A stretch of 64,000 bases of DNA, taken from the NCBI RefSeq assembly GCF_016432865.1, contig NC_067399.1:621984001-622048000 (forward strand), in the 5' to 3' direction. Numbering within the stretch: the stretch's first letter is position 1; each line of letters starts with the position of its first letter. The translations under genes and the position numbers were made by a program. A model generated the notes under the pieces. It was not told the origin of the DNA, did no database searches, and saw only the letters and a list, made by a program, of their open reading frames with translations. This DNA is from Antechinus flavipes. Its lineage: Eukaryota. Shown here in pieces: positions 33,703 to 62,658 of this stretch.

Positions 33703-34590
33703 CTCTCAGACTGGCTAAGATGACAGGAAAAGATAATAATGAATGTTGGAGGGGATGTGAGACACTAGTACATTGTTGGTGAAATTGTGAAATGATCCAA
33801 CTATTCCAGAGAGCTATGGAATGGAACTATACCCAAAGACTATAAAACTATGTATACCCTTGGATCCTAGCAGTGTCTCTACTGAATCTGTATCCTAAAC
33901 AGATCATAAAAAAGGGAAAAGGACCCACGTGTGCAAAAATGTCTGCGGCGGCCCTTCTTGTAGTGGCAAGAAACTGGAAATTGATGGGATGCCCATCAGT
34001 TGGGGAATGGCTGAATAAGTTATGGTATATGAATGTTATAGAATATTATTGTTCTATAAAAAATGATCAGCATAATGATTTCAGAAAGCCCTGGAGAGAT
34101 TTACATGAACTGATACAAAGTGAAATGAGTAGAACCAAGAGAACATCGTACATAGCAACAACAAGGCTATGTGATGATCAACTGTGATGTGGCTCTTTTC
34201 AATAATGAGGTGATTCAAGGCAATTCCAATAGACTTGTGATGTTTAGAGCCACCTGCATCCAGAAGGAGGACTAGGGGACTGAATATGGAGCACGACATA
34301 GCATTTTCACTTTTTTGTTTTTGTTTGCTTGCTTTTTGTTTTCTTTCTCATTTTTTCCCTTTTTGGTCTGATTTTTCTTGTACAGCATGATAATTATGGA
34401 AATACATATAGAAGAATTGAATACATTTAACATAAATTGGATTGCTTGCCTGTAAGGGAAGGGGTGAGGGGAAAGGAGAGAAAAAAATGGAACACAACGT
34501 TTTGCAGGGTGAATGTTGAAAATTATCTATGCTTATGCTTTGAAAATAAAAAGCTTTAAAAAACAGTCAAATAGTTCCCCTCTCCCCAAG
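33703..34590 (+). mobile_element. 5'-truncated L1 (ORF2 C-terminus and 3'UTR) with 13-bp TSD
   Basis: ORF 33873..34187 LYPKQIIKKGKGPTCAKMSAAALLVVARNWK...GEWLNKLWY is L1 ORF2p C-terminal sequence. AATAAA at 34545-34550. TSD aaagtaaggtgga at 33690-33702 and 34591-34603. Confidence 0.92.
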
Positions 34591-34837: not shown

Positions 34838-36453
34838 TGTTTGTTTGTTTGGGGGGAAATCACTGCTTTTTAATTTTTTTTAAATATATGTAAATCCAAT
34901 ATAGGTGTTTATACAATTAACTTGCTGCATAAGAAGAATCAGATCAAAGAGGAAAAAAAATAAGAAAATAAAATTCAAACAAATAACAACAAAAGAAGTG
35001 AAAATACTATGTTGTGATCCACACTCAGTTCCCACAGTCCTTTCTCTGGGTGTAGATGGTTCTTATCATCACAAGATTATTGGAACTGGACTGAATCATC
35101 TTATTGTCGAAAAGAACCACATTCATCAGAATTGATCATCATATAATCTTGCCATTGCCGTGTAAAATGAAATCTTGGTTCTGCTCCTCATTTTGTTTAG
35201 CATCAGTTCATATAAATCTCTCCAGCCCTCTCTAAAACCATTCTCCTGATCTTTTCTTACAGAACAATAGTATTCCATAACATTCATATGCCATAACTTA
35301 TTTAGCCATTCTCCAATTAATGGGCATCCATTCAGTTTCCAGTTTCTTGACACTACAAAAAGGGCTGCCACAAATATTTTTGTGCATGGGGGTCCTTCTC
35401 CCTTCTTTAAGATCTCTTTGGGATATAAGCTCAGTAGAAACACTGCTGGTTCAAAGGGTATGCACAGTTTGATAATCTTTTGAACACAGTTGCAAATTGC
35501 TTTCCAGAATGGCTGGATCCATTCACAATTCCACCAACAATGTATTAGTGTCCCAGTTTTCTCACATCCCCTCCAACATATGTCATTATCTTATCCTGTC
35601 ATCTTAGCCAATCTGAGAGGTGTGTAGTAGTACCTTAATTTCTCTGATCAATAGTGATTTAGAGCAGCTTTTCATATGGCTAGAAATGGTTCTAATTTCT
35701 TCATCTGAAAATTGTCTGTCCTTTGACCATATATCAACTGGAGAATGGCTTGAGTTCTTATAAATTTGAGTAAATTCTCTATATATTTTAGAAATGAGGC
35801 CTTTATCAAAATCCTCAAATGTAAAAATATTTTCCCAATTTATTGCTTCCCTTCTAATCTTGTCTGCATTAGTTTTGTTTGTACAAAACCTTTTTAACTT
35901 AATACAACCAAAATTACCTATTTGGTGTTCACTCATGAGTTCCAGTTCTTCTTTGGTCACAGATTCCTTCCTTCCTTTCTTCTCCACAGATCTGAGAGGT
36001 AACCTATCCTTTATTCTTCTAATTTGCTTATAATATCACTCTTTATTTAGACTTTATCTTGGCATATGGTTTTAGGTGTGGGAATGCCTAGTTTCTGCTA
36101 TACAAGTTTCCAATTTTCCCAGCAGTTTTTGTCAAATAGTGAGTTCTTAGTCCCAAAACTGGGGTCCTTGGGTTTGTCAAACATTAGATTTCTATAGTTA
36201 TTGACTATTTTGTCCTGTGAACCTAACCTATTCCACCGATCGACTACTCTATTTCTAAGCCAGTACCAAATGGTTTTGATGACCGCTGCTTCATAATATA
36301 GTTTTAGTACTGGCACAGCTATGCCATCTTAATTGGCATTTTTTCATTAATTCCCTTGAAATTGTTGATCTTTTATTCTTCCAGATGAACTTTGTTATTA
36401 TTTTTTCCTGATCTGAAAAATAATTTTTTGGAAGTTTGATTGGTATGGCACTA
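34838..36453 (-). mobile_element. 5'-truncated L1 (about 1.6 kb of ORF2 3' region and 3'UTR) inserted into a MIR-like SINE
   Basis: ORFs 35126..35443, 35604..35987 and 36098..36316 (LKLYYEAAVIKTIWYW) are broken L1 ORF2p. The host MIR halves sit at about 34690-34837 and 36454-36540. Confidence 0.92.
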
Positions 36454-46571: not shown

Positions 46572-46577
46572 TTTATT
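46572..46577 (-). terminator. Candidate polyadenylation signal of GPR15LG
   Basis: AATAAA on the minus strand followed by GATGTTTTCC, about 920 nt after the stop codon, in non-SINE sequence. An earlier AATAAA (46880-46885) lies inside a MIR-like SINE. Confidence 0.45.
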
Positions 46578-47497
46578 GTTCAAAGATATAGTGAGACATA
46601 AAGATGGAGTTTACACTGAAGCAATTGGCTGTTGGAATATATGAAAAAACTGGAATTCTCTTCCCAAGAAGTCTTTCCTTTGGATAAAAGTAAATGATTT
46701 TTTAAGTGCCTTGAAATCTCAGGATTTTTAAATTATGTCTTTCAGACTTGAAATCAATAATCCTCAGGGATGAATGAGACCCAAAAGACCAAGTCAGAAT
46801 CCTTCATTTTATAGATGAAACCCATGTGGCCAGTCCAACACTAAATAGCTAGTAAGCGGCAAAGTGCTAAACACAGAACTTTATTCCACTGTACTACACA
46901 ACTTCCGTCTCCTTCCCAGGACCTCATTCAGCCCCCAAATTACACAACTGGGTATATTGGAAGTCAATTCAAACATGGCTAGTTATAAGGTGAGTGCTAA
47001 TCCTGTCTTATGGCACATACCCTGTAATGGAATCCTTTGTACTTGTTCTTTGGGGATTTAGCACATAAGAACCACTCAGGAGGTTTAAACCTGTGATTCA
47101 TTCATTAGTTACAATACTATAACAAACTACCGTTTAAAGAACAGAATGGCAGGATCAGTTAAGTGTAGATGTTACAGAGGGACAGAGATAATGTGATCTA
47201 TGTTTCCTTGGCACAGACAGCTAGAGGAGCTTCCACTCTGGAGACTGGGAAGAATAAATAACACAACTGGCCAAAGAGTGGTTGAGTTTGAAAGATTTAG
47301 TGACAAAGAAGAGTGTTTGTCCTTTAGTGAGCTGGATGCAGTGGATCATCAGCATGATGCAGCTTGGAGAAGAATGAATCTTCTATGAATGATGAGGAGC
47401 TTTAGGTTGAAACCAAAAAGCAGTGAGTGTTGTAAGCTTGGAGATCAGAGAAGGGCTCTTGGTCTTTGCTTTCTCCATGGTTTCCTATTCTGGTTTG

Positions 47498-47589
47498 TTA
47501 TATCTGAGGAAGTGCCCCAGGGATCTTCTTACAAGGACTGATTTTGCCTTTACATAACTTGTAGTGTAGCGACATTTTTGGATTTCTCC
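47498..47589 (-). CDS. GPR15LG: GPR15LG/C10orf99 orthologue, exon 3 (92 bp): (G)RNPKMSLHYKLCKGKISPCKKIPGALPQI*
   Basis: Acceptor cttattctcag|GG, phase 1, TAA at 47500-47498. C-terminal PGALPQI matches the GPR15L signature PGALPQV. Confidence 0.92.
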
Positions 47590-47639
47590 CTGAGAATAAG
47601 AGAAGAAGGATTGGGTATGGGAGGAATGATGGATCAATA

Positions 47640-47905
47640 AAAAGGGAGGGGAGGGAGAGAGGTGAATGACAGAGATAGAGAGAAAACAGGGAGAAAGAAA
47701 GATGTGTATATAGAGAAGGAAAAATAGAGGGGGAGAAAGAGAGACAGAGACAGAAACAGAGAAAAAGAGAAATGGAGAGAGACACACAGACAGAGAGACA
47801 GAGAGAGAAAGAGAGAAATAGGGAGAAAAAATGAGAGAGCGAGAGGAGGGAAGAGAAGGAGAAGGAGGAGAAGGAGGAGAAGAAGGAGGAGGAAAGAAAA
47901 GGAGG
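47640..47905. repeat. Polypurine (GA/GGA/AGAC)n tract running into an assembly gap
   Basis: Near-continuous purines on the + strand, next to the GPR15LG exon 3 acceptor. Confidence 0.9.
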
Positions 47906-48390
47906 NNNNNNNNNNNNNNNNNNNNNNNNNNNNNNNNNNNNNNNNNNNNNNNNNNNNNNNNNNNNNNNNNNNNNNNNNNNNNNNNNNNNNNNNNNNNNNN
48001 NNNNNNNNNNNNNNNNNNNNNNNNNNNNNNNNNNNNNNNNNNNNNNNNNNNNNNNNNNNNNNNNNNNNNNNNNNNNNNNNNNNNNNNNNNNNNNNNNNNN
48101 NNNNNNNNNNNNNNNNNNNNNNNNNNNNNNNNNNNNNNNNNNNNNNNNNNNNNNNNNNNNNNNNNNNNNNNNNNNNNNNNNNNNNNNNNNNNNNNNNNNN
48201 NNNNNNNNNNNNNNNNNNNNNNNNNNNNNNNNNNNNNNNNNNNNNNNNNNNNNNNNNNNNNNNNNNNNNNNNNNNNNNNNNNNNNNNNNNNNNNNNNNNN
48301 NNNNNNNNNNNNNNNNNNNNNNNNNNNNNNNNNNNNNNNNNNNNNNNNNNNNNNNNNNNNNNNNNNNNNNNNNNNNNNNNNNNNNNNNNN
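47906..48390. other. Assembly gap (485 N) in GPR15LG intron 2
   Basis: Run of N. Confidence 0.99.
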
Positions 48391-48936
48391 AAGGCAGACA
48401 TATGTTTACAAAATCAAATACAATCAACACATGGGTGACAGTATCCCCAGCCCTATTACAGTGAAGTGAAAAATATGCTTTACTGGTAGATAACAGAAGG
48501 TGGTAGGAAATCTTATGTCTTAAGAAAACACATTTTTTAAAAAATCCAAGATTTGCAGATTCACTCCTTACTTGCCAAGAAGAAAAACACAGGGCTGATC
48601 CAGCTCAAAGAACTTTGGTGGTTCCCTGTTGACTCTAGGACAAATACTAACCCCTCAGTTTAATATTTAAAATTTTTTCTGTCTTCAACCTTTCCTTTCC
48701 ATGCTGTTTGTATGTTACTTCTCTCCCATATAATACATCACAGCCAATGTGATTAATTACTGTTCCCTATATATGCTCTATTTTTGTGCTTGCAAATTGA
48801 CCATTCTCTCTTCTCATCTCTCACTGCCTCTTGGAATCAATAATTTCCTTCAAGACACGTTACCATCAGCAAAATTATTTTACTGTAATAATGAACATAG
48901 ATATCTTTCATTGACCTTATACACCTAAAAAAGAGA

Positions 48937-48972
<36 letters not shown>

Positions 48973-49004
48973 GCATACATCATCTACATTTTATATAAAC
49001 TAGT

Positions 49005-49245
49005 TGTTTTTCAGTTATTTCAAGTGTATCCAACTCCTTGTGACCCCATTTGGAGTTTTCTTAGTAGTGATTCTGAAATGGTTGGCCATTTCCTTCTCCA
49101 GCTCCTTTTACAGATGAGGAAACTGAGGCAAATGAGGTTAAGTGATGGTCACTCAGGTAATAAGTTCTGAGGCCAGGTTTGAACTCAGGAAGATGAGCCT
49201 TCCTGACTCCAGGATCAGCACTCTATCCACTGTGCCATCTGGCTG
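49005..49245 (-). mobile_element. MAR1-type SINE in GPR15LG intron 2
   Basis: gttgttttcagt...tgtgaccccatttggagttttctt...ggttggccatttccttctccagctc...ctctatccactgtgccatctggctgcc. Confidence 0.8.
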
Positions 49246-50245
49246 CCTCTTTGTGTATATTAGACACATGATGAATGTTTTTTCCCCCTGAACCCAATTG
49301 AAGGAATGCCTGAGCATCTAAGGACCTCATCATCACATCTCTCCCCAGGTCTTGGATAAACCTGTTTAATAGCCACCAGCTGCTAAACCTCCTTTGAGGT
49401 CCTCCTGGGAGAACAGATTGGAGGATAGTGTTGGTATGGGAGGATATCGGCGTCTTTACCATCACCTCTTCCCCACTCCTCCTCTCCTCAGGTGGCTCAC
49501 ACTTCAATTTGGTGACTAGTAGAAGACTCAGTTATTTTTGCCCCTGGCTCCCACTTTGCCAGTCAGCCCTTCGGTGAACTTGAAAATGGGGAGGGATTGG
49601 GGAGAAGTGAGGATTGATAAAATCCAATAGCAAGACCCTGGGATAATCTTATCACATTATCTGTTTCCCTATAATTTCTAAATTCCTTACCTCACCCATT
49701 TACCTTGAATCCACAAGCCTAATGATTGAAAATTCTGAGAAGCTCTAGAAAGGATTTTTTTCCCCTTCCAGTTACTTAGTAGCTGAGAAGCAAAGAGACA
49801 GAGGATTACGCTCTTGACATCATATGATACAGGGGGTTACATATCTCTTTGATAACCTTCTCACAGTAGTGTTTTTAAATGCACAGGGTTACAAAGGAAG
49901 CCAATTATACTGTAATAAAATGATCTATTTATCTCTCTCTATTTATTTCTCTTATCTGTGTCTCATTGGACTCTGAGTTAATAATTCTAGATCTAATCTA
50001 ACTACGAAGATTCACTTCAGACAGAGACTCAGATGTTAAGTGACTTCTGATAAACAAATCTATTGTTCTTACAACCACTTCTTCCTCCTGCTCTCCCTTC
50101 CTCTGGTGATTGTGGGGTTAAAGGGGAGCCTTAGAAACTAGGAAAGATTCCCCCTTTTATTTCTCAAGTAAAATTATTGGTTCAGAGGTCCTGGAAATAA
50201 TCGTAGACTTCCGATAGCTCCAAAGGAAGAGACTGAACTGATTAC

Positions 50246-50320
50246 CTTTCAAACTTTTGAATGCATGGTTTGGACCATTATGGCAGCAAAGACCTTTCCG
50301 AGGTTTATTGCGTCTTGCAC
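50246..50320 (-). CDS. GPR15LG: GPR15LG/C10orf99 orthologue, exon 2 (75 bp): (G)ARRNKPRKGLCCHNGPNHAFKSLK(G)
   Basis: Acceptor gtctctccag|GT, donor AAAG|gtaatc, phase 1-1. Basic N-terminus, LCCH motif and LKG at the exon end parallel human RLCCHRVPSPNSTNLKG (recalled). Confidence 0.9.
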
Positions 50321-52482
50321 CTGGAGAGACATAAACAGAAACATTTCCATTCTGCAACAGGACTACTACACCTGTATGCACTCATAGTACATGTGTTCAC
50401 GTTCCATTAAATCAGATAGTGAAATTTCTAATTCTAAGCATTGGGTTTGAGACCTTAAATTACTTTCCCAAGTATTTAAAGAAAGATTTGATCCAAGATA
50501 TTCTGACTCCAAAATCAGGAACAATATTGTCTCCATTACAGCAGGCCCCAGGTAGTAAGGATGCATTGTCATGCATTTGGAGAGATAGAACATTAAAAAT
50601 CAAATAACTATAATGGCATATGATTAAGTATTTAATGAAAAGTAGAGCTAATAAATGCTTTCTAGCTTGAGGAGAGAGCTTGTGGGCTGGGGTAATCATG
50701 TAGGCAGACTTTCTGCCATCTCTTGTTGGAAGATTTAGAAAAGTTCTCACTCATTGACAATGAAAACTTTCAGGGACCTGAAATTAATTTTTTCTCCTTC
50801 CCTCTACCATTCCTCCTCATGCCCTCAAGCATTAAAGATTAAACTTAGCAAAAGCTGGGTTTTTCTGAAAGGCAACAGGATGCCATATTGTCCGCCTCTT
50901 TCCTTGGCCTCTCATGACAAATTTCTAGCTCTTAAATATGCACACCTTTTCTCTCAGCTAAGACAATGAATTAGGAGTCAAAGGGATTTTCATTTTCATT
51001 TCCTTTTTCAGGAATGGAGATTATAATAAACACATACATTCCCTGTGTGGACAAGCTGGGAAGCTTTCTGCAGGCACAATATATTCCTACATTTACAGAA
51101 CTGAATTTCACAGACATAGAATTTGAAAAAAGTCAGAATTTTTAGACAGCAGATTGGTATGATGGTGAAAAAATTGACCCCCGGGTGAGAAAACCCTGCC
51201 TCTATAATTCTGTCATGTAATGTCTTGGTGCTTCAGACACCTCTGTCAGATAGCCCATTGTCAATCTGCATTGGTAGAGGATGCTTTCCTGCCTGAAGTC
51301 TCCAAACTAAGGATGTCACAAGTCTGAACAAAAACAACAACAAAAAAATCTTCTTGCCTATATATCATTCATTCCAGGTTGAAAAAGACTCAGTCTGGCA
51401 ACTAGACTGGTGAGAAACCTTGGAATCCAGACAGACAGCTCTTCAGATCACAGGGAGGCATGAGAATTCAATCTCTATATCCAAAGTTCGAAATATTCCA
51501 TTTTTAAAGGACTCTCAGAGTCTAGAAGTAGTGCCGTTATCTTGGACAAGTCGGACAATTTCTTACTGTCCCTTTACTCTTTTCCCAAGCTTTTTGTTGG
51601 TGGAAGTTTGTGTTATGTCTTAGGTAAAAGTCTAAGTTATGCTTAAGATTAGGGACCTGGTAGATGCTTAGAAGCTTCAGAAGATGACGTATACATGGCT
51701 ATGATTCACTTAAAGAATCCCTAACTGAACTCAAAGTCTAGCCCACTTGGATGCTTGCCTCTGGAAATGTCTGAAGAATGGTCCAGGTGATTCCTTGAGC
51801 CCCTAACAATAACAGGCAGTTTTTGTACCCAGAGTAAGGACCACAAACCACAGCAAGATCCAATTACATGAAGCTCACTTTCAGCTAAGTTATGTTGTGT
51901 TGAATTAATCATCATGCAGCCTTTGTAAGGGATGCTATGGGGGACCAGGGAATGGGGAGATGAAGGACATGCTGGTATTCTACCTATTGTTGGGAGGCTG
52001 ATATACAGGGAGAAATGATGTTAGGGCTGGCAGAAGATGGAAAAGGATAGAGTCAGGTCAAAAAAGGAGCTGCCCTCAATCAATTCATTAATCATTATAA
52101 TAATACATTATACACATTAATATATAATATTATATACAATATGTTATGTTATAGGAATATTATATGTAACATATATCATATATTAAATAATGTAATTATA
52201 TAATAATAAATAGTTATTATGTGCCTACTATGTGGCAGTCACAGTGTTAAGCACTAGAGATACAAAAAGAAGCAAATGACAATCCTTACCCTCGAGGACT
52301 CCCATCGGAAAGTTTTCTATTTCAACTATTCTTAAAGACTGCAAGTGCTGTTAATACCTTTTAATATGGGTAGCCTGGGACAAAACTCCAGTTGTTCCAC
52401 CCTAGTTATGCCTTTGTCCCCAAAGGCCAACTGAAAGAGAAATTACAGCCTTACCCCCCACTTTCCCAAAGAAAGGCCATAC

Positions 52483-52552
52483 CTTCTGTAGAGAAGGCCA
52501 ACAAACACAGGAACAGGATATACAGGAGACTGGTGAAGTTGGGGAATTTCAT
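52483..52552 (-). CDS. GPR15LG: GPR15LG/C10orf99 orthologue, exon 1 (70 coding bp), signal peptide MKFPNFTSLLYILFLCLLAFSTE(G)
   Basis: ATG at 52552 (gccccagcATGa), donor GAAG|gtatgg in phase 1. Aligns without gaps to the recalled human signal MRLLVLSSLLCILLLCFSIFSTEG. Confidence 0.92.
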
Positions 52553-52617
52553 GCTGGGGCTATCAGGTGCTCTCAGTCTGGGCAATAGTGTGGATCAGCA
52601 GGCTAAAACTGTCAGCC

Positions 52618-52687
52618 TTTAAATACCAGCAGACTTGTGTCTTAGTGTGGGTGTGGAGGTGCCCTTTGTATTTTCCCTCAGGGAAAA
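52618..52687 (-). promoter_or_regulatory. GPR15LG core promoter: TATA box, KLF CACCC box and a 17-bp palindrome
   Basis: TATTTAAA on the minus strand at 52618-52625, about 66 nt upstream of the ATG. CCACACCC at 52649-52656. TTTTCCCTCAGGGAAAA at 52671-52687. Confidence 0.65.
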
Positions 52688-52899
52688 CTCAACTCCTCCC
52701 AAGAGAGAAAGTGCCAGCTGGATGGGGAAAAACTGGTCCATATTATACCCGTACATCCCAGAGGCCTCCAGGTGAAACTGGCTCAGGATGTCAGGAAATT
52801 ACTGGCATGGGAGTAGGCCACATCTAAAGTGTAAAGGTGTACATTTCTGCCTAGAGACAATTAGTATCTCAGGGTTGAACTTTAGCATCAATTATAGCT

Positions 52900-55976: not shown

Positions 55977-56108
55977 NNNNNNNNNNNNNNNNNNNNNNNN
56001 NNNNNNNNNNNNNNNNNNNNNNNNNNNNNNNNNNNNNNNNNNNNNNNNNNNNNNNNNNNNNNNNNNNNNNNNNNNNNNNNNNNNNNNNNNNNNNNNNNNN
56101 NNNNNNNN
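55977..56108. other. Assembly gap (132 N)
   Basis: Run of N. Confidence 0.99.
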
Positions 56109-58718: not shown

Positions 58719-60110
58719 TTTTTAAACTTAATTTTTTTCTTCTTTTTTTTAATTAAAGTTTTTTATTTATAAAACACATGCATGGGTAATTCTTCACCAT
58801 TGACCCGTGCAAAGCCTTTTGTTCCAAATTATCCCTTCCTTCTCCCCACTCTTTCCTCTAAATGGCAGGTAGTCCAATACATGTTGAATGTGTTAAAATA
58901 TGTTAAATCAAATATATATATATACATATTTAAATAGTTGTCTTGCTGCACAAGAAAAATCGGATCAATAAGGAAAAAAAACCTGGGAAAGAAAACAAAA
59001 TGCAAGCAAATAACAACAGAGAGTGTCTGAATGCTATGTTGTCTTCCATCTCTCTGTGGGTGTAGATGGCTCTATCCATCATTGAACAAGTAGAATTGGT
59101 TTGAATCATCTCATTGTTGAAGAGAGCCACATCCATTAGAATTGATCCTCATATAGTCTTGTTGTTGAAGTATATAATGATCTCCCAGTTCTGCTATTTC
59201 ACTTAGCATCAGTTCATGTAAGTCTTGCCAAACCTTTCTGAAATCATCCTGCTGGTTATTTCTTACAGAACAATAATATTCCATAACATTCATATACCAC
59301 AATTTACCCAACCATTCTCCAACTGATAGACATCCACTCAGTTTCCAGTTTCTGACCACTACAAAAAGGGCTGCCACAAACATTTTTGCACATGTGGGTC
59401 CCTTTCCCTCCTTTAAGATCTCTTTGGGGTATAAGCCCAGTAGAAACACTGATGGATCAAAAGGTATCCACAGTTTGATAACTTTTTGAACATAATTCCA
59501 AATTGCTCTCCAGAATGGCTGGATCCATTCACAATTCCACCAACAATGTATTAGTGTCCCAGTTTTCCCACATCCTCTACATTTGTCATTATTTTTTCCT
59601 GTCATCTTAGCCAATCTGGGGTGTGTAGTGGTACTTCAGAGTTGTCTTAATTTGCATTTCTCTGATCAATAGTGATTTGGAACAGCTTTTCATATGACTG
59701 GAAATAGTTTCAATTTCTTCATCTGAAAATTGTCTGTTCATATCCTTTGACCATTTATCAATTGGAGAATGGTTTGAATTTTTATAAAGTTGAATCAATT
59801 ATTTCTAAATTTTGGAAATGAGGCCTTTATCAGAACCTTTGAATGTAAAAATGTTTTCCCAGTTTATTCTTTCATTCTAATCTTGTCTGTATTACTTTTG
59901 TTTATACAAAAAAAAACTTTTTAACTTAATATAATCAAAATTTTCTATTTGGTGATCAATAATGATCTCTAGTTCTTTGGTCACCAATTTCTTCCTCCTC
60001 CACAGATCTGAGAGGTAAACTAGTCTATGTTCTTCTAATTTGTTTATAATATCATTCTTTATGTCTAGATTATGAATTCATTTTGACTTTATTTTGGTAT
60101 ATGGTGTTAT
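58719..60110 (-). mobile_element. 5'-truncated L1 (about 1.4 kb) inserted into an L2 element
   Basis: ORF 59111..59614 (CGKTGTLIHCWWNC...LYPKEILKEGKGPTCAKMFVAALFVV) is the L1 ORF2p cysteine-rich C-terminus. TSD gttctt at 58713-58718 and 60111-60116. L2-like sequence continues on both sides. Confidence 0.92.
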
Positions 60111-60925: not shown

Positions 60926-62658
60926 AAAAGATGTTTTCATACAACTCAAGTAATGACATAAACCTTGGACTTCTTGAAAAGCAGAGTGGGAAGAACTGGA
61001 AAAAGCAAAAAGATAAAGTTAAGAGGGTTGTTTTTATCAATCTCCCAGGAGAAAAAAAACAAAAGCCAGTCAGGAGGCAAATCTATCAAAAATGAAAGGG
61101 AGTGTGAAATAAGTCTTGATTTAAAGATAGTTAAGCAACTGAACCAATTCCCCAAATCTTATTTTAATGAGGAAAGAGAATTAATTCCTAATTATGTAAA
61201 AATGATTGTGTTAAAAAAAAACTTATAGGAAGCAAATAAAGAAATATTAGGGAAAAATGAAGGAACATAAACTGAGAAATATGGCATCTTACATTTTAGG
61301 TGTGGCAGAATTATCTAATAAAAGGGTTATTAACTTTTGTTCTTGTGTCTTGGGCCCCCCTTGGTAAAATGCAGCTGAAATATAGTTATCAAAGTGTTTT
61401 TTAAAAAAAGTTTCCAATTCCTAGATTAAGAAGTCTTGATAATATGTTAAGGAACTATATGGTAAGGATACTGGATTTGGACTCATAAGGTCTTGGTTCT
61501 GTCATTTATTATCTATGTTTCTCTGGATAAGTTATTTATTAACCTCTATGAGCCTTGGTCATCTCTCTTTAAATTCCATCTTTGAGTAGTTGGACTAGGT
61601 GACCATTATGATCCAATCCAGCTCATACTACAATTAAATTTAATATAATTGTAGTATTTTAGACTTGAAAAGGACAGTAATTATTCATCCCAGGCATTCT
61701 TGAAAAGTACTTGGTGAACCACTGTGATTCCACTGTATTCTGAAATACTACATGAAAAAAACTTTGCAATTTATAGATAAGCACACAAATCAGAGTGATT
61801 AGGATTTGCTCATTGGATTGTTTTCGCTATCTGTTAAATACTACTGAGATACCTGGGAAGAGTCTGTTCCCTAGCATTAGGTACCATCTTTTTATTTTTC
61901 TAATGTAAGAGATTCTTAACAGGGGTTCCTGAACTTGGATGAGAAGGGGGAAAAAATTACATCTTTATTTCAATGAAATTGTTTTCCTTGATATTCTTCT
62001 GCATTTTGTTTCATTATTATTTTGATCAGAGGTCCATGAGCTTAACGAGAATGCTACAGGGGTCTGTGACCAGAAAGTTTAGAACCTGTGCCCTAATGCT
62101 TATTGTAATTAAAAAGTTCTCCTGGGATAAAGGGCCAGGGCTGAGCTAATTGTGGACTCTTGGAACCAGTAGGGCTTTCAATGGCAGGACATCATTAGGA
62201 GCTGCAGTGGTATATTCACAAATGCTGCCTCTTGCTCCCTGCTGCTTCCTCTGGTCCTGAGCTTTTGCTGAGTGTATAAGGCAAAATGCAAGAGTCAGGG
62301 GAAGAGCTTCTATCACTTCTCCCCATGAGACTATTCGCAGCATCACATCTCAAGATCTAAAATTGGAAGTGAAAGTTGGAGGATCAGTCAGGAGCCTGAG
62401 GGTTCAGGGCAGCTCTCCCAGAGTCCTGTTTCATCTTGAGGTTTTTGTGCAATTTCTATTTCTTCTCTCTTACCTTACCTGGATTTCTCTTACAATCCCT
62501 ACCCTTGGCTGTTCCTCAGTTCTCATCCCTTCCTAGAAGTCCCACCTTTTTTAATCATGTCTGCCAGTTCCCCTTCCTCCTTTTACAGGATTCTTTATTT
62601 CAGTTAGTCATTTATTAAACCACTTACTGATAAGCAGCATTTATATAATGCTTTAAAG

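What the first reader, a model, noticed from the sequence alone, without database searches (positions are those of the whole stretch)
46572..52625. Hidden three-exon gene: marsupial orthologue of the GPR15 ligand (C10orf99/GPR15LG)
Seen in sequence: three minus-strand exons (52552-52483, 50320-50246, 47589-47498) with GT-AG boundaries and matching phase-1 junctions splice to a 78-aa ORF, MKFPNFTSLLYILFLCLLAFSTEG-ARRNKPRKGLCCHNGPNHAFKSLKGRNPKMSLHYKLCKGKISPCKKIPGALPQI. A TATA box lies upstream and a candidate AATAAA downstream. The ORF track never assembles it: exon 1 is absent, and exon 3 appears only at the end of a gap-spanning junk ORF. Established: human C10orf99 (GPR15L/AP-57) lies just upstream of CDHR1 on the same strand, has three coding exons, a CC motif and a C-terminal PGALPQV, and is a colon/skin epithelial ligand for the lymphocyte-homing receptor GPR15. 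Inference: marsupials have an intact GPR15L, a short fast-evolving gene that automated annotation may miss. I cannot tell whether it is already annotated in this species.
Basis: partly seen in the sequence, partly recalled or inferred. Interest (0 to 1): 0.85.

Follow-up and report, generated by a model that had tools for sequence, protein, structure and literature searches.

The report
Antechinus GPR15 ligand gene, already annotated
The three small exons are real and encode the marsupial version of GPR15LG, a secreted peptide that calls lymphocytes to gut and skin, but public databases already annotate this exact protein in this species, so it is ordinary.

Summary
Minus-strand exons 52552-52483, 50320-50246 and 47589-47498 have GT..AG introns and phase-1 junctions. 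The N run 47906-48390 lies inside intron 2, 317 nt upstream of the exon 3 acceptor, and its flanks are collinear in the public record.

The protein matches Pfam PF15854 GPR15L end to end (E 2.7e-12). Its only solved-structure match is the GPR15LG chain of entry 9wxm. A profile search of 1.84 billion proteins returned 9 hits; the 8 looked up all sit in clusters named GPR15LG or its old synonyms.

The gene is not hidden. The protein is 100% identical to RefSeq XP_051829942.1, "protein GPR15LG [Antechinus flavipes]", with the same CDS span. Named orthologues exist in six other marsupials.

Four marsupials share the 70/75/92-95-nt exon plan and the same splice sites. The coding sequence evolves at about the intron rate. 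The signal peptide, CC motif, C-terminal IPGALPQ(I/L) and proximal promoter are conserved.

Verdict: real, correctly identified, already known.

The parts
52483..52552 (-). Exon 1 coding part (70 nt). ATG at 52552; encodes the signal peptide MKFPNFTSLLYILFLCLLAFSTE plus the first base of Gly24. Donor GTATGG.
   Evidence: hydropathy peak over residues about 8-20; E23-G24 invariant in 12 orthologues
50246..50320 (-). Exon 2 (75 nt, phase 1 in and out). Encodes the cationic core with the CC motif (C35, C36).
   Evidence: acceptor ...CTCTCCAG and donor GTAATC identical in Antechinus and Sarcophilus, with AG and GT kept in all four marsupials
47498..47589 (-). Exon 3 coding part (92 nt including the TAA stop). 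Encodes C61, C68 and the receptor-activating tail KKIPGALPQI.
   Evidence: tail aligns to the human ...VVPGALPQV of PDB 9wxm chain L
52553..52720 (-). Proximal promoter and 5'UTR, with the TATA-like TATTTAAAG at 52625-52617. This is the best conserved part of the locus.
   Evidence: 93% mean column identity over four marsupials; 90-92% pairwise against 66-81% for introns
46572..46577 (-). Candidate poly(A) signal AATAAA, 920 nt after the stop.
   Evidence: kept in all four marsupials; not verified by RNA; rival signal at 46885-46880
47906..48390 (.). N run inside intron 2 (the intron spans 47590-50245). It touches no exon.
   Evidence: flanks collinear and in register in the public record; letters not read

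Best explanation
This is the GPR15LG (C10orf99 / AP-57 / CSBF) gene of the yellow-footed antechinus, Antechinus flavipes. It is a three-exon gene for a 78-aa secreted precursor and is already in RefSeq as XP_051829942.1. Shown here: the exon structure, family membership, species and record, conservation of the gene plan in four marsupials, and a conserved TATA-type promoter. Inferred from the family: the signal peptide is cut after Gly24, which aligns with the human mature form 25-81. This would release a 54-aa peptide of about 6 kDa, with pI 10.6, net charge about +14 and four cysteines that presumably form two disulfides. Epithelia of colon and skin would secrete it. Its cationic core would dock on the sulfated acidic N-terminus of GPR15. 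Its free C-terminal tail IPGALPQI would insert as a hook into the receptor's transmembrane pocket, with Leu75 at the bottom and the terminal carboxylate on a receptor lysine. That would activate Gi and attract GPR15-bearing lymphocytes. A second, direct antimicrobial role is plausible from the charge.
For: The spliced ORF and its boundaries were read directly. Pfam PF15854 GPR15L scores 47.2 bits against a cut-off of 27, E 2.7e-12, covering 1-77 of 77 profile positions. The protein is 100% identical to XP_051829942.1 'protein GPR15LG [Antechinus flavipes]', called on CM028218.1 of GCA_016432865.2 with a 5055-nt span equal to 52552-47498, and the locus matches the window with 0 mismatches. Named orthologues exist in six more marsupials. 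A profile search of 1.84 billion proteins gave 9 hits; the 8 looked up belong to clusters that carry GPR15LG/GPR15L, C10orf99-homolog or SUSD2-binding-factor names, from marsupials, bat, lemur, voles, pig, kangaroo rat, macaque and duck. The sole PDB hit is 'Protein GPR15LG', 9wxm chain L. Four marsupials share the same 70/75/92-95-nt exon plan with GT-AG introns. M1, L10, L13, L15, E23, G24, C35, C36, G49, C61, K62, P72, G73, L75, P76 and Q77 are invariant across 12 mammalian and bird orthologues. The mature peptide has pI 10.63, 14 K+R and 0 D+E. For the mechanism, in human GPR15L the tail 44-EPRLWVVPGALPQV-57 penetrates the GPR15 pocket, L54 and the terminal carboxylate are essential, and length is strictly constrained (PMC12663730). 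The three exons encode the signal peptide, the cationic domain and the activating peptide (PMC5594226).
Against: No RNA or protein evidence could be examined here, so expression and the 3' end are unverified. The coding sequence as a whole shows little purifying selection. Antechinus versus Sarcophilus has 15 nonsynonymous and 1 synonymous change, and CDS divergence is about equal to intron divergence. The marsupial tail replaces the human hook residues L47-W48-V49 with C-K-K/R, and the last cysteine sits 10 residues from the C-terminus rather than 18. Receptor engagement may therefore differ in detail. Presence of a GPR15 receptor gene in this genome was not testable.
Confidence: 0.96

Rival explanations
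1. The gene is under relaxed constraint in dasyurids. On this view it is an intact-looking but functionally decaying copy that has not yet picked up a stop codon.
For: Antechinus versus Sarcophilus CDS divergence is 6.8%, against 5.7-8.3% for introns. There are 15 nonsynonymous and 1 synonymous difference, pN/pS 4.2. Antechinus also has a one-codon deletion before C68 and L60 where the other marsupials have F.
Against: The excess of nonsynonymous change is not significant (Fisher p 0.2). All residues invariant across mammals and a bird are kept. Both introns keep canonical splice sites. The proximal promoter is 90-94% identical across marsupial orders, well above the intron level at depth. Deep comparisons give pN/pS of 0.54-0.56 with p of 0.03-0.06. 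The ORF is intact in seven marsupials. Fast evolution is the known habit of this family ('extreme sequence diversity', bioRxiv 10.64898/2026.06.02.729464).
Confidence: 0.04
2. In marsupials the peptide works mainly as a cationic host-defence (antimicrobial) peptide or through other partners (SUSD2, CXCR4, ACKR5/GPR182). GPR15 agonism would be weakened by the altered cysteine framework and the shortened tail.
For: The net charge is +14 with no acidic residue. The core evolves at about the neutral rate, as many host-defence peptides do. The hook residues L-W-V are replaced by C-K-K/R. The literature lists the AP-57 antimicrobial, SUSD2, CXCR4 and GPR182 activities of the human peptide.
Against: The part under the strictest conservation in marsupials is the GPR15-activating end IPGALPQ(I/L), including Leu75 and the exact C-terminal length. 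Antimicrobial charge alone does not explain that.
Confidence: 0.08
3. The three pieces are chance open frames joined by chance GT/AG dinucleotides.
For: The exons are short (70-92 nt), and GT/AG pairs are frequent in AT-rich sequence.
Against: The Pfam E-value is 2.7e-12 over the full profile. There is an identical RefSeq model. The same exon plan holds in four species. The only PDB hit is GPR15LG.
Confidence: 0.003

Closest known systems
RefSeq XP_051829942.1, protein GPR15LG [Antechinus flavipes]
   Same: It is identical in all 78 residues and has the same CDS span on CM028218.1 of GCA_016432865.2.
   Different: Nothing differs; this is the same gene.
Marsupial GPR15LG/GPR15L (Sarcophilus XP_023350391.1 and KAM9061518.1, Macrotis XP_074087966.1; Vombatus, Phascolarctos, Petaurus and Dromiciops)
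   Same: Identity is 57-85%. Where DNA was available, the exon plan is the same 70/75/92-95 nt. They share the CC...C-x6/7-C cysteine pattern and the tail CK(K/R)IPGALPQ(I/L).
   Different: Antechinus lacks one residue before C68 and has L60 for F. The central core is highly variable, and Macrotis lacks six residues there.
Eutherian GPR15LG (human C10orf99/AP-57/CSBF; pig NP_001230830.1; PDB 9wxm chain L)
   Same: Shared features are three exons, a signal peptide ending in EG, a CC motif, four mature cysteines, a strongly basic core, and a PGALPQ plus hydrophobic C-terminal residue that activates GPR15. The gene neighbourhood includes a cadherin gene.
   Different: Identity is only 36-45%. Eutherians have the second cysteine pair as C-x2-C about 18-21 residues from the end, followed by (F/L/S)W(V/I)V. 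Marsupials have C-x6/7-C with the last Cys 10 residues from the end and K-K/R in place of W-V.
Classical CC chemokines, and chemerin / apela
   Same: Like CC chemokines it is small, cationic, disulfide-bonded and secreted, carries a CC motif and attracts leukocytes through a class A GPCR. Like chemerin and apela its activating end is C-terminal (PMC5594226).
   Different: It has no sequence homology to chemokines. Chemokines insert their N-terminus into the receptor, whereas GPR15L inserts its C-terminus (PMC12663730).

Membership tests
GPR15LG (Pfam PF15854) | Sequence match to the family profile above the curated cut-off | tested here: met
   47.2 bits against a cut-off of 27, E 2.7e-12, covering 1-77 of 77 profile positions, with no other family hit. 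The 8 looked-up hits of a 1.84-billion-protein profile search sit in clusters named for this family. The only PDB hit is GPR15LG.
GPR15LG | Small precursor (<100 aa) with an N-terminal signal peptide | tested here: met
   The precursor is 78 aa. Kyte-Doolittle hydropathy peaks at 3.3 over residues about 8-20, and T-E-G precedes Ala25 (small residues at -3 and -1). E23-G24 are invariant and align with the human cleavage site, mature form 25-81 (PMC9539578 abstract). This is heuristic only; SignalP was not available.
GPR15LG | Highly basic mature peptide | tested here: met
   The 54-aa mature form has pI 10.63, 14 K+R, 0 D+E and net charge about +14.
GPR15LG | Four cysteines in the mature peptide, including a CC motif | tested here: met
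   The cysteines are C35, C36, C61 and C68. The count and the CC motif are met. The spacing of the second pair is marsupial-specific (C-x6 here, against C-x2-C in eutherians and duck).
GPR15LG | Conserved C-terminal Leu/Ile-Pro motif in the receptor-activating tail (PGALPQ + V/I/L) | tested here: met
   The protein ends in IPGALPQI. P72, G73, L75, P76 and Q77 are invariant in 12 orthologues. The feature definition comes from bioRxiv 10.64898/2026.06.02.729464.
GPR15LG | Three (or four) exons: signal peptide, then cationic domain, then activating peptide | tested here: met
   The coding exons are 70/75/92 nt with phase-1 junctions and GT-AG introns, and the plan is the same in Sarcophilus, koala and Dromiciops. 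The definition comes from PMC5594226.
GPR15LG | Synteny: between GHITM and CDHR1 | tested here: inconclusive
   Cadherin-domain ORFs lie downstream on the same strand at 20594-20860 and 6202-6474 (Pfam Cadherin, E 5e-4 and 6.5e-4). The best PDB match is CDH23 EC1, followed by CDHR2. No tool could confirm the name CDHR1. No gene other than GPR15LG is called up to 62552, so GHITM lies outside the window, if it is present.
GPR15LG | Binds and activates GPR15; expressed by colon or skin epithelium | not testable with these tools

The most novel reading that the evidence does not exclude
Marsupial GPR15LG may use a lineage-specific disulfide framework. Its second cysteine pair is C-x6/7-C, and the last Cys lies only 10 residues from the C-terminus. 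That Cys occupies the position of human hook residue L47, with K-K/R in place of W48-V49. The cationic core would then be tethered much closer to the receptor pocket than in eutherians. Together with a core that evolves at about the neutral rate and a promoter conserved better than the peptide, this could mean a changed mode of GPR15 engagement or a shift towards direct antimicrobial action in marsupials.
Probability: 0.2. Interest if true: 0.35.

Novelty: already known. Interest (0 to 1): 0.08.

Why it matters
The finding adds little. It shows that a reader working from raw sequence can assemble a short, fast-evolving three-exon gene correctly, but the gene is already in RefSeq for this species and for six other marsupials. 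The literature states that GPR15LG orthologues are 'well documented in mammals' (bioRxiv 10.64898/2026.06.02.729464). The residual value is comparative. The marsupial cysteine spacing and shortened tail, and a promoter that is better conserved than the peptide, are small points for people working on how GPR15 recognises its ligand.

Tried and rejected
1. Naming the downstream cadherin gene. A word-index search with the ORF 6202-6474 returned only unnamed short fragments. The ESM Atlas gave only generic 'Cadherin domain' clusters. PDB gave CDH23 and CDHR2 EC1. CDHR1 is therefore inferred from position and from my own recollection of CDHR1 motifs, and is not tool-verified.

2. Positive selection. 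Pairwise Nei-Gojobori counts give pN/pS of 4.2 for Antechinus versus Sarcophilus, but Fisher p is 0.2. The gene is too short for this test, so I make no claim.

3. A CpG island or first exon of the neighbouring gene around 30.3 kb. No window of 400 nt exceeds CpG o/e of 0.38, so I dropped this.

4. Papers on marsupial GPR15L. None holds both terms, and PMC8892231 and the 2026 preprint name no marsupial.

5. DNA for Vombatus, Petaurus and Macrotis was not retrievable, so the codon analyses rest on four species.

6. The scan's own notes hold nothing on GPR15, CDHR1 or GHITM in this genome.

7. No Monodelphis orthologue appeared in any search. Given how these indexes work, this is not evidence of absence.
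Full report
**Observation**

I read the three proposed exons on the minus strand.
- Exon 1 starts at the ATG at 52552 and ends at 52483 before GTATGG.
- Exon 2 (50320-50246) follows ...TGTCTCTCCAG and ends before GTAATC.
- Exon 3 (47589-47498) follows ...CTTATTCTCAG and ends in TAA.

A script joined them into 237 nt, divisible by three. Both junctions are phase 1.

The mechanical ORF list shows why an ORF track misses the gene. Exon 1 lies in a 44-aa ORF, exon 2 in a 74-aa ORF, and exon 3 at the end of a 310-aa ORF that reads through the N run.

**The gap**

The window has N runs at 16287-16457, 47906-48390 and 55977-56108. The second lies inside intron 2 (47590-50245), 317 nt upstream of the exon 3 acceptor, so no coding base is affected.

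The public record that carries the gene was fetched as L001. It equals the reverse complement of window 37498-62552 with 0 mismatches over 24,438 compared bases and has the same total length. The flanks are therefore collinear and in register, and exon 3 belongs to the same locus as exons 1 and 2. That record has letters where the window has N. Following the operators' note, I neither read nor used them; all later alignments for this species used the window with its Ns.

Intron 2 also aligns with the Sarcophilus intron at 91.7% identity over the non-N columns.

**What it is**

The protein matches only one Pfam family, PF15854 GPR15L. The score is 47.2 bits against a curated cut-off of 27, E 2.7e-12, over the whole profile.

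The word-index search returned a 100% identical 78-aa protein, 'protein GPR15LG [Antechinus flavipes]', accession XP_051829942.1. It is called on CM028218.1 of assembly GCA_016432865.2 at about 622.02 Mb, with a gene span of 5055 nt. That span is exactly 52552 minus 47498 plus 1. The window is therefore from the yellow-footed antechinus, and the gene is already annotated with the same coding structure.

Named orthologues exist in Sarcophilus, Vombatus, Phascolarctos, Petaurus, Macrotis and Dromiciops.

A profile of six marsupial proteins, scored against 1.84 billion representatives, found nine proteins. I looked up eight of them. Their clusters carry the names GPR15LG, GPR15L, 'secreted protein C10orf99 homolog' or 'colon-derived SUSD2 binding factor', from marsupials, horseshoe bats, mouse lemur, voles, pig and peccary, kangaroo rat, macaques and a duck.

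The only match among solved structures is 'Protein GPR15LG', chain L of 9wxm. It aligns from the CC motif to the last residue.

**Anatomy and conservation**

- **Exon plan.** I recovered the exons in four marsupials from three orders by demanding an exact translation to the annotated protein. All four have exons of 70, 75 and 92-95 nt, GT-AG introns and near-identical splice-site contexts.
- **Invariant residues.** Across twelve orthologues the invariant positions are M1, L10, L13, L15, E23, G24, C35, C36, G49, C61, K62, P72, G73, L75, P76 and Q77.
- **Mature peptide.** From Ala25, by analogy with the human 25-81 form (PMC9539578), it has 54 residues, about 6.0 kDa, pI 10.63, 14 Lys+Arg and no acidic residue. 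The N-terminal 24 residues have a typical hydrophobic core and T-E-G before the cut.
- **Family definition.** These are the features a 2026 preprint uses to define the family: fewer than 100 aa, a signal peptide, a highly basic mature peptide, four cysteines, a C-terminal Leu/Ile-Pro motif, three or four exons, and a position next to GHITM and CDHR1 (bioRxiv 10.64898/2026.06.02.729464).

**Neighbourhood**

ORFs on the same strand downstream, at 20594-20860 and 6202-6474, hit the Pfam Cadherin domain. The first of them matches the EC1 repeat of cadherin-23 best, followed by CDHR2, among solved structures.

This fits CDHR1, the expected neighbour. No tool could put that name on it, so I score synteny as inconclusive rather than met. 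No gene other than GPR15LG is called up to position 62552. GHITM, if present, lies beyond the window.

**Rate of evolution**

The coding sequence changes about as fast as the introns.

| Comparison | CDS nt identity | Intron identity | 170 nt before the ATG |
|---|---|---|---|
| Antechinus vs Sarcophilus | 93.2% | 91.7-94.3% | 94.4% (300 nt upstream) |
| Antechinus vs koala | 84.2% | 66-81% | 91.6% |
| Antechinus vs Dromiciops | 79.5% | 75-79% | 90.4% |

The 170 nt before the ATG show 93% mean column identity across all four species and include the TATTTAAAG box.

Nei-Gojobori counts give 15 nonsynonymous and 1 synonymous difference between the two dasyurids. That is pN/pS 4.2 with Fisher p 0.2, which is not significant. 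The ratio is 0.73-0.77 against koala and 0.54-0.56 against Dromiciops, with p of 0.03-0.06.

Constraint is thus concentrated on a few positions (signal peptide, cysteines, tail) and on the promoter. This agrees with the 'extreme sequence diversity' reported for this family.

**Mechanism (inferred from the family, not tested here)**

In the human complex the C-terminal tetradecapeptide EPRLWVVPGALPQV enters the transmembrane pocket of GPR15. The last eleven residues form a hook, and L54 sits at the bottom. The terminal carboxylate pairs with K192, and adding one or two residues lowers potency. The cationic core is thought to bind the sulfated receptor N-terminus (PMC12663730; PMC5594226).

The antechinus tail ISPCKKIPGALPQI keeps PGALPQ, the leucine and the exact end, with Ile for Val at the last residue and at the position before the proline. 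I therefore expect the same mode of activation, and a role in recruiting GPR15-bearing lymphocytes to epithelia.

**A difference from eutherians**

Marsupials have the second cysteine pair as C-x6/7-C. The last cysteine lies 10 residues from the end, at the position of human L47, and K-K/R replaces W-V. Eutherians and the duck have C-x2-C further upstream. A sister note of this scan (s1-198813) is about this point. I confirm the pattern in seven marsupials, but its functional meaning is untested.

**Ends of the transcript**

Another at 46885-46880 is kept in three. Without RNA data I cannot choose between them.

**Verdict**

The gene is neither hidden nor new: it is already annotated in this species and its relatives, and the literature treats mammalian GPR15LG orthologues as well documented. 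I set interest low.

Noticed in passing
window 52553-52720 (-): The proximal promoter and 5'UTR of GPR15LG are better conserved across marsupial orders (90-92% pairwise, 93% mean column identity) than the coding sequence (80-84%) or the introns (66-81%). They include the TATTTAAAG box and a long invariant stretch upstream of it.
   Followed up: partly
window 47498-47589 (-), protein residues 61-78: All seven marsupial GPR15LG proteins have C-x6/7-C, with the last Cys 10 residues from the C-terminus and K-K/R where eutherians have W-V. Eutherians and duck have C-x2-C further upstream. This is the subject of sister note s1-198813.
   Followed up: partly
window 47906-48390 and 55977-56108: The public record of the same assembly, fetched as L001, has the same length but no N at these places. 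In the window these N runs are therefore masks of exact length rather than gaps of estimated size. The letters were not read.
   Followed up: partly
window 457-720, 6202-6474, 18322-18717, 20594-20860 (all -): These look like exons of a cadherin-repeat gene on the same strand downstream of GPR15LG. Two ORFs hit Pfam Cadherin, and the EC1-like exon is closest to CDH23, then CDHR2, in PDB. The gene is presumably CDHR1, but that name is not tool-verified.
   Followed up: partly
window 47600-47905 (-): A CT-rich low-complexity tract in intron 2 lies directly next to the N run. It gives the long Ser/Leu/Phe-rich junk ORFs seen in the ORF list.
   Followed up: no
window 59114-59635 (-), 35129-36035 (-), 33846-34184 (+): The longest ORFs in the window share a WWNCEWIQPFW / LYPKEI motif. 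From my own recollection this looks like LINE-1 ORF2 C-terminal fragments, so these would be interspersed repeats and not genes. No tool check was made.
   Followed up: no
searches: No Monodelphis (American opossum) GPR15LG appeared among the hits, while seven Australidelphian species did. Given the word index and clustering, this absence is not conclusive.
   Followed up: no
Sarcophilus proteins P0002 and P0007: The two Tasmanian devil assemblies give GPR15LG proteins that differ at residue 5 (N versus H). This is a possible polymorphism in a fast-evolving peptide.
   Followed up: no
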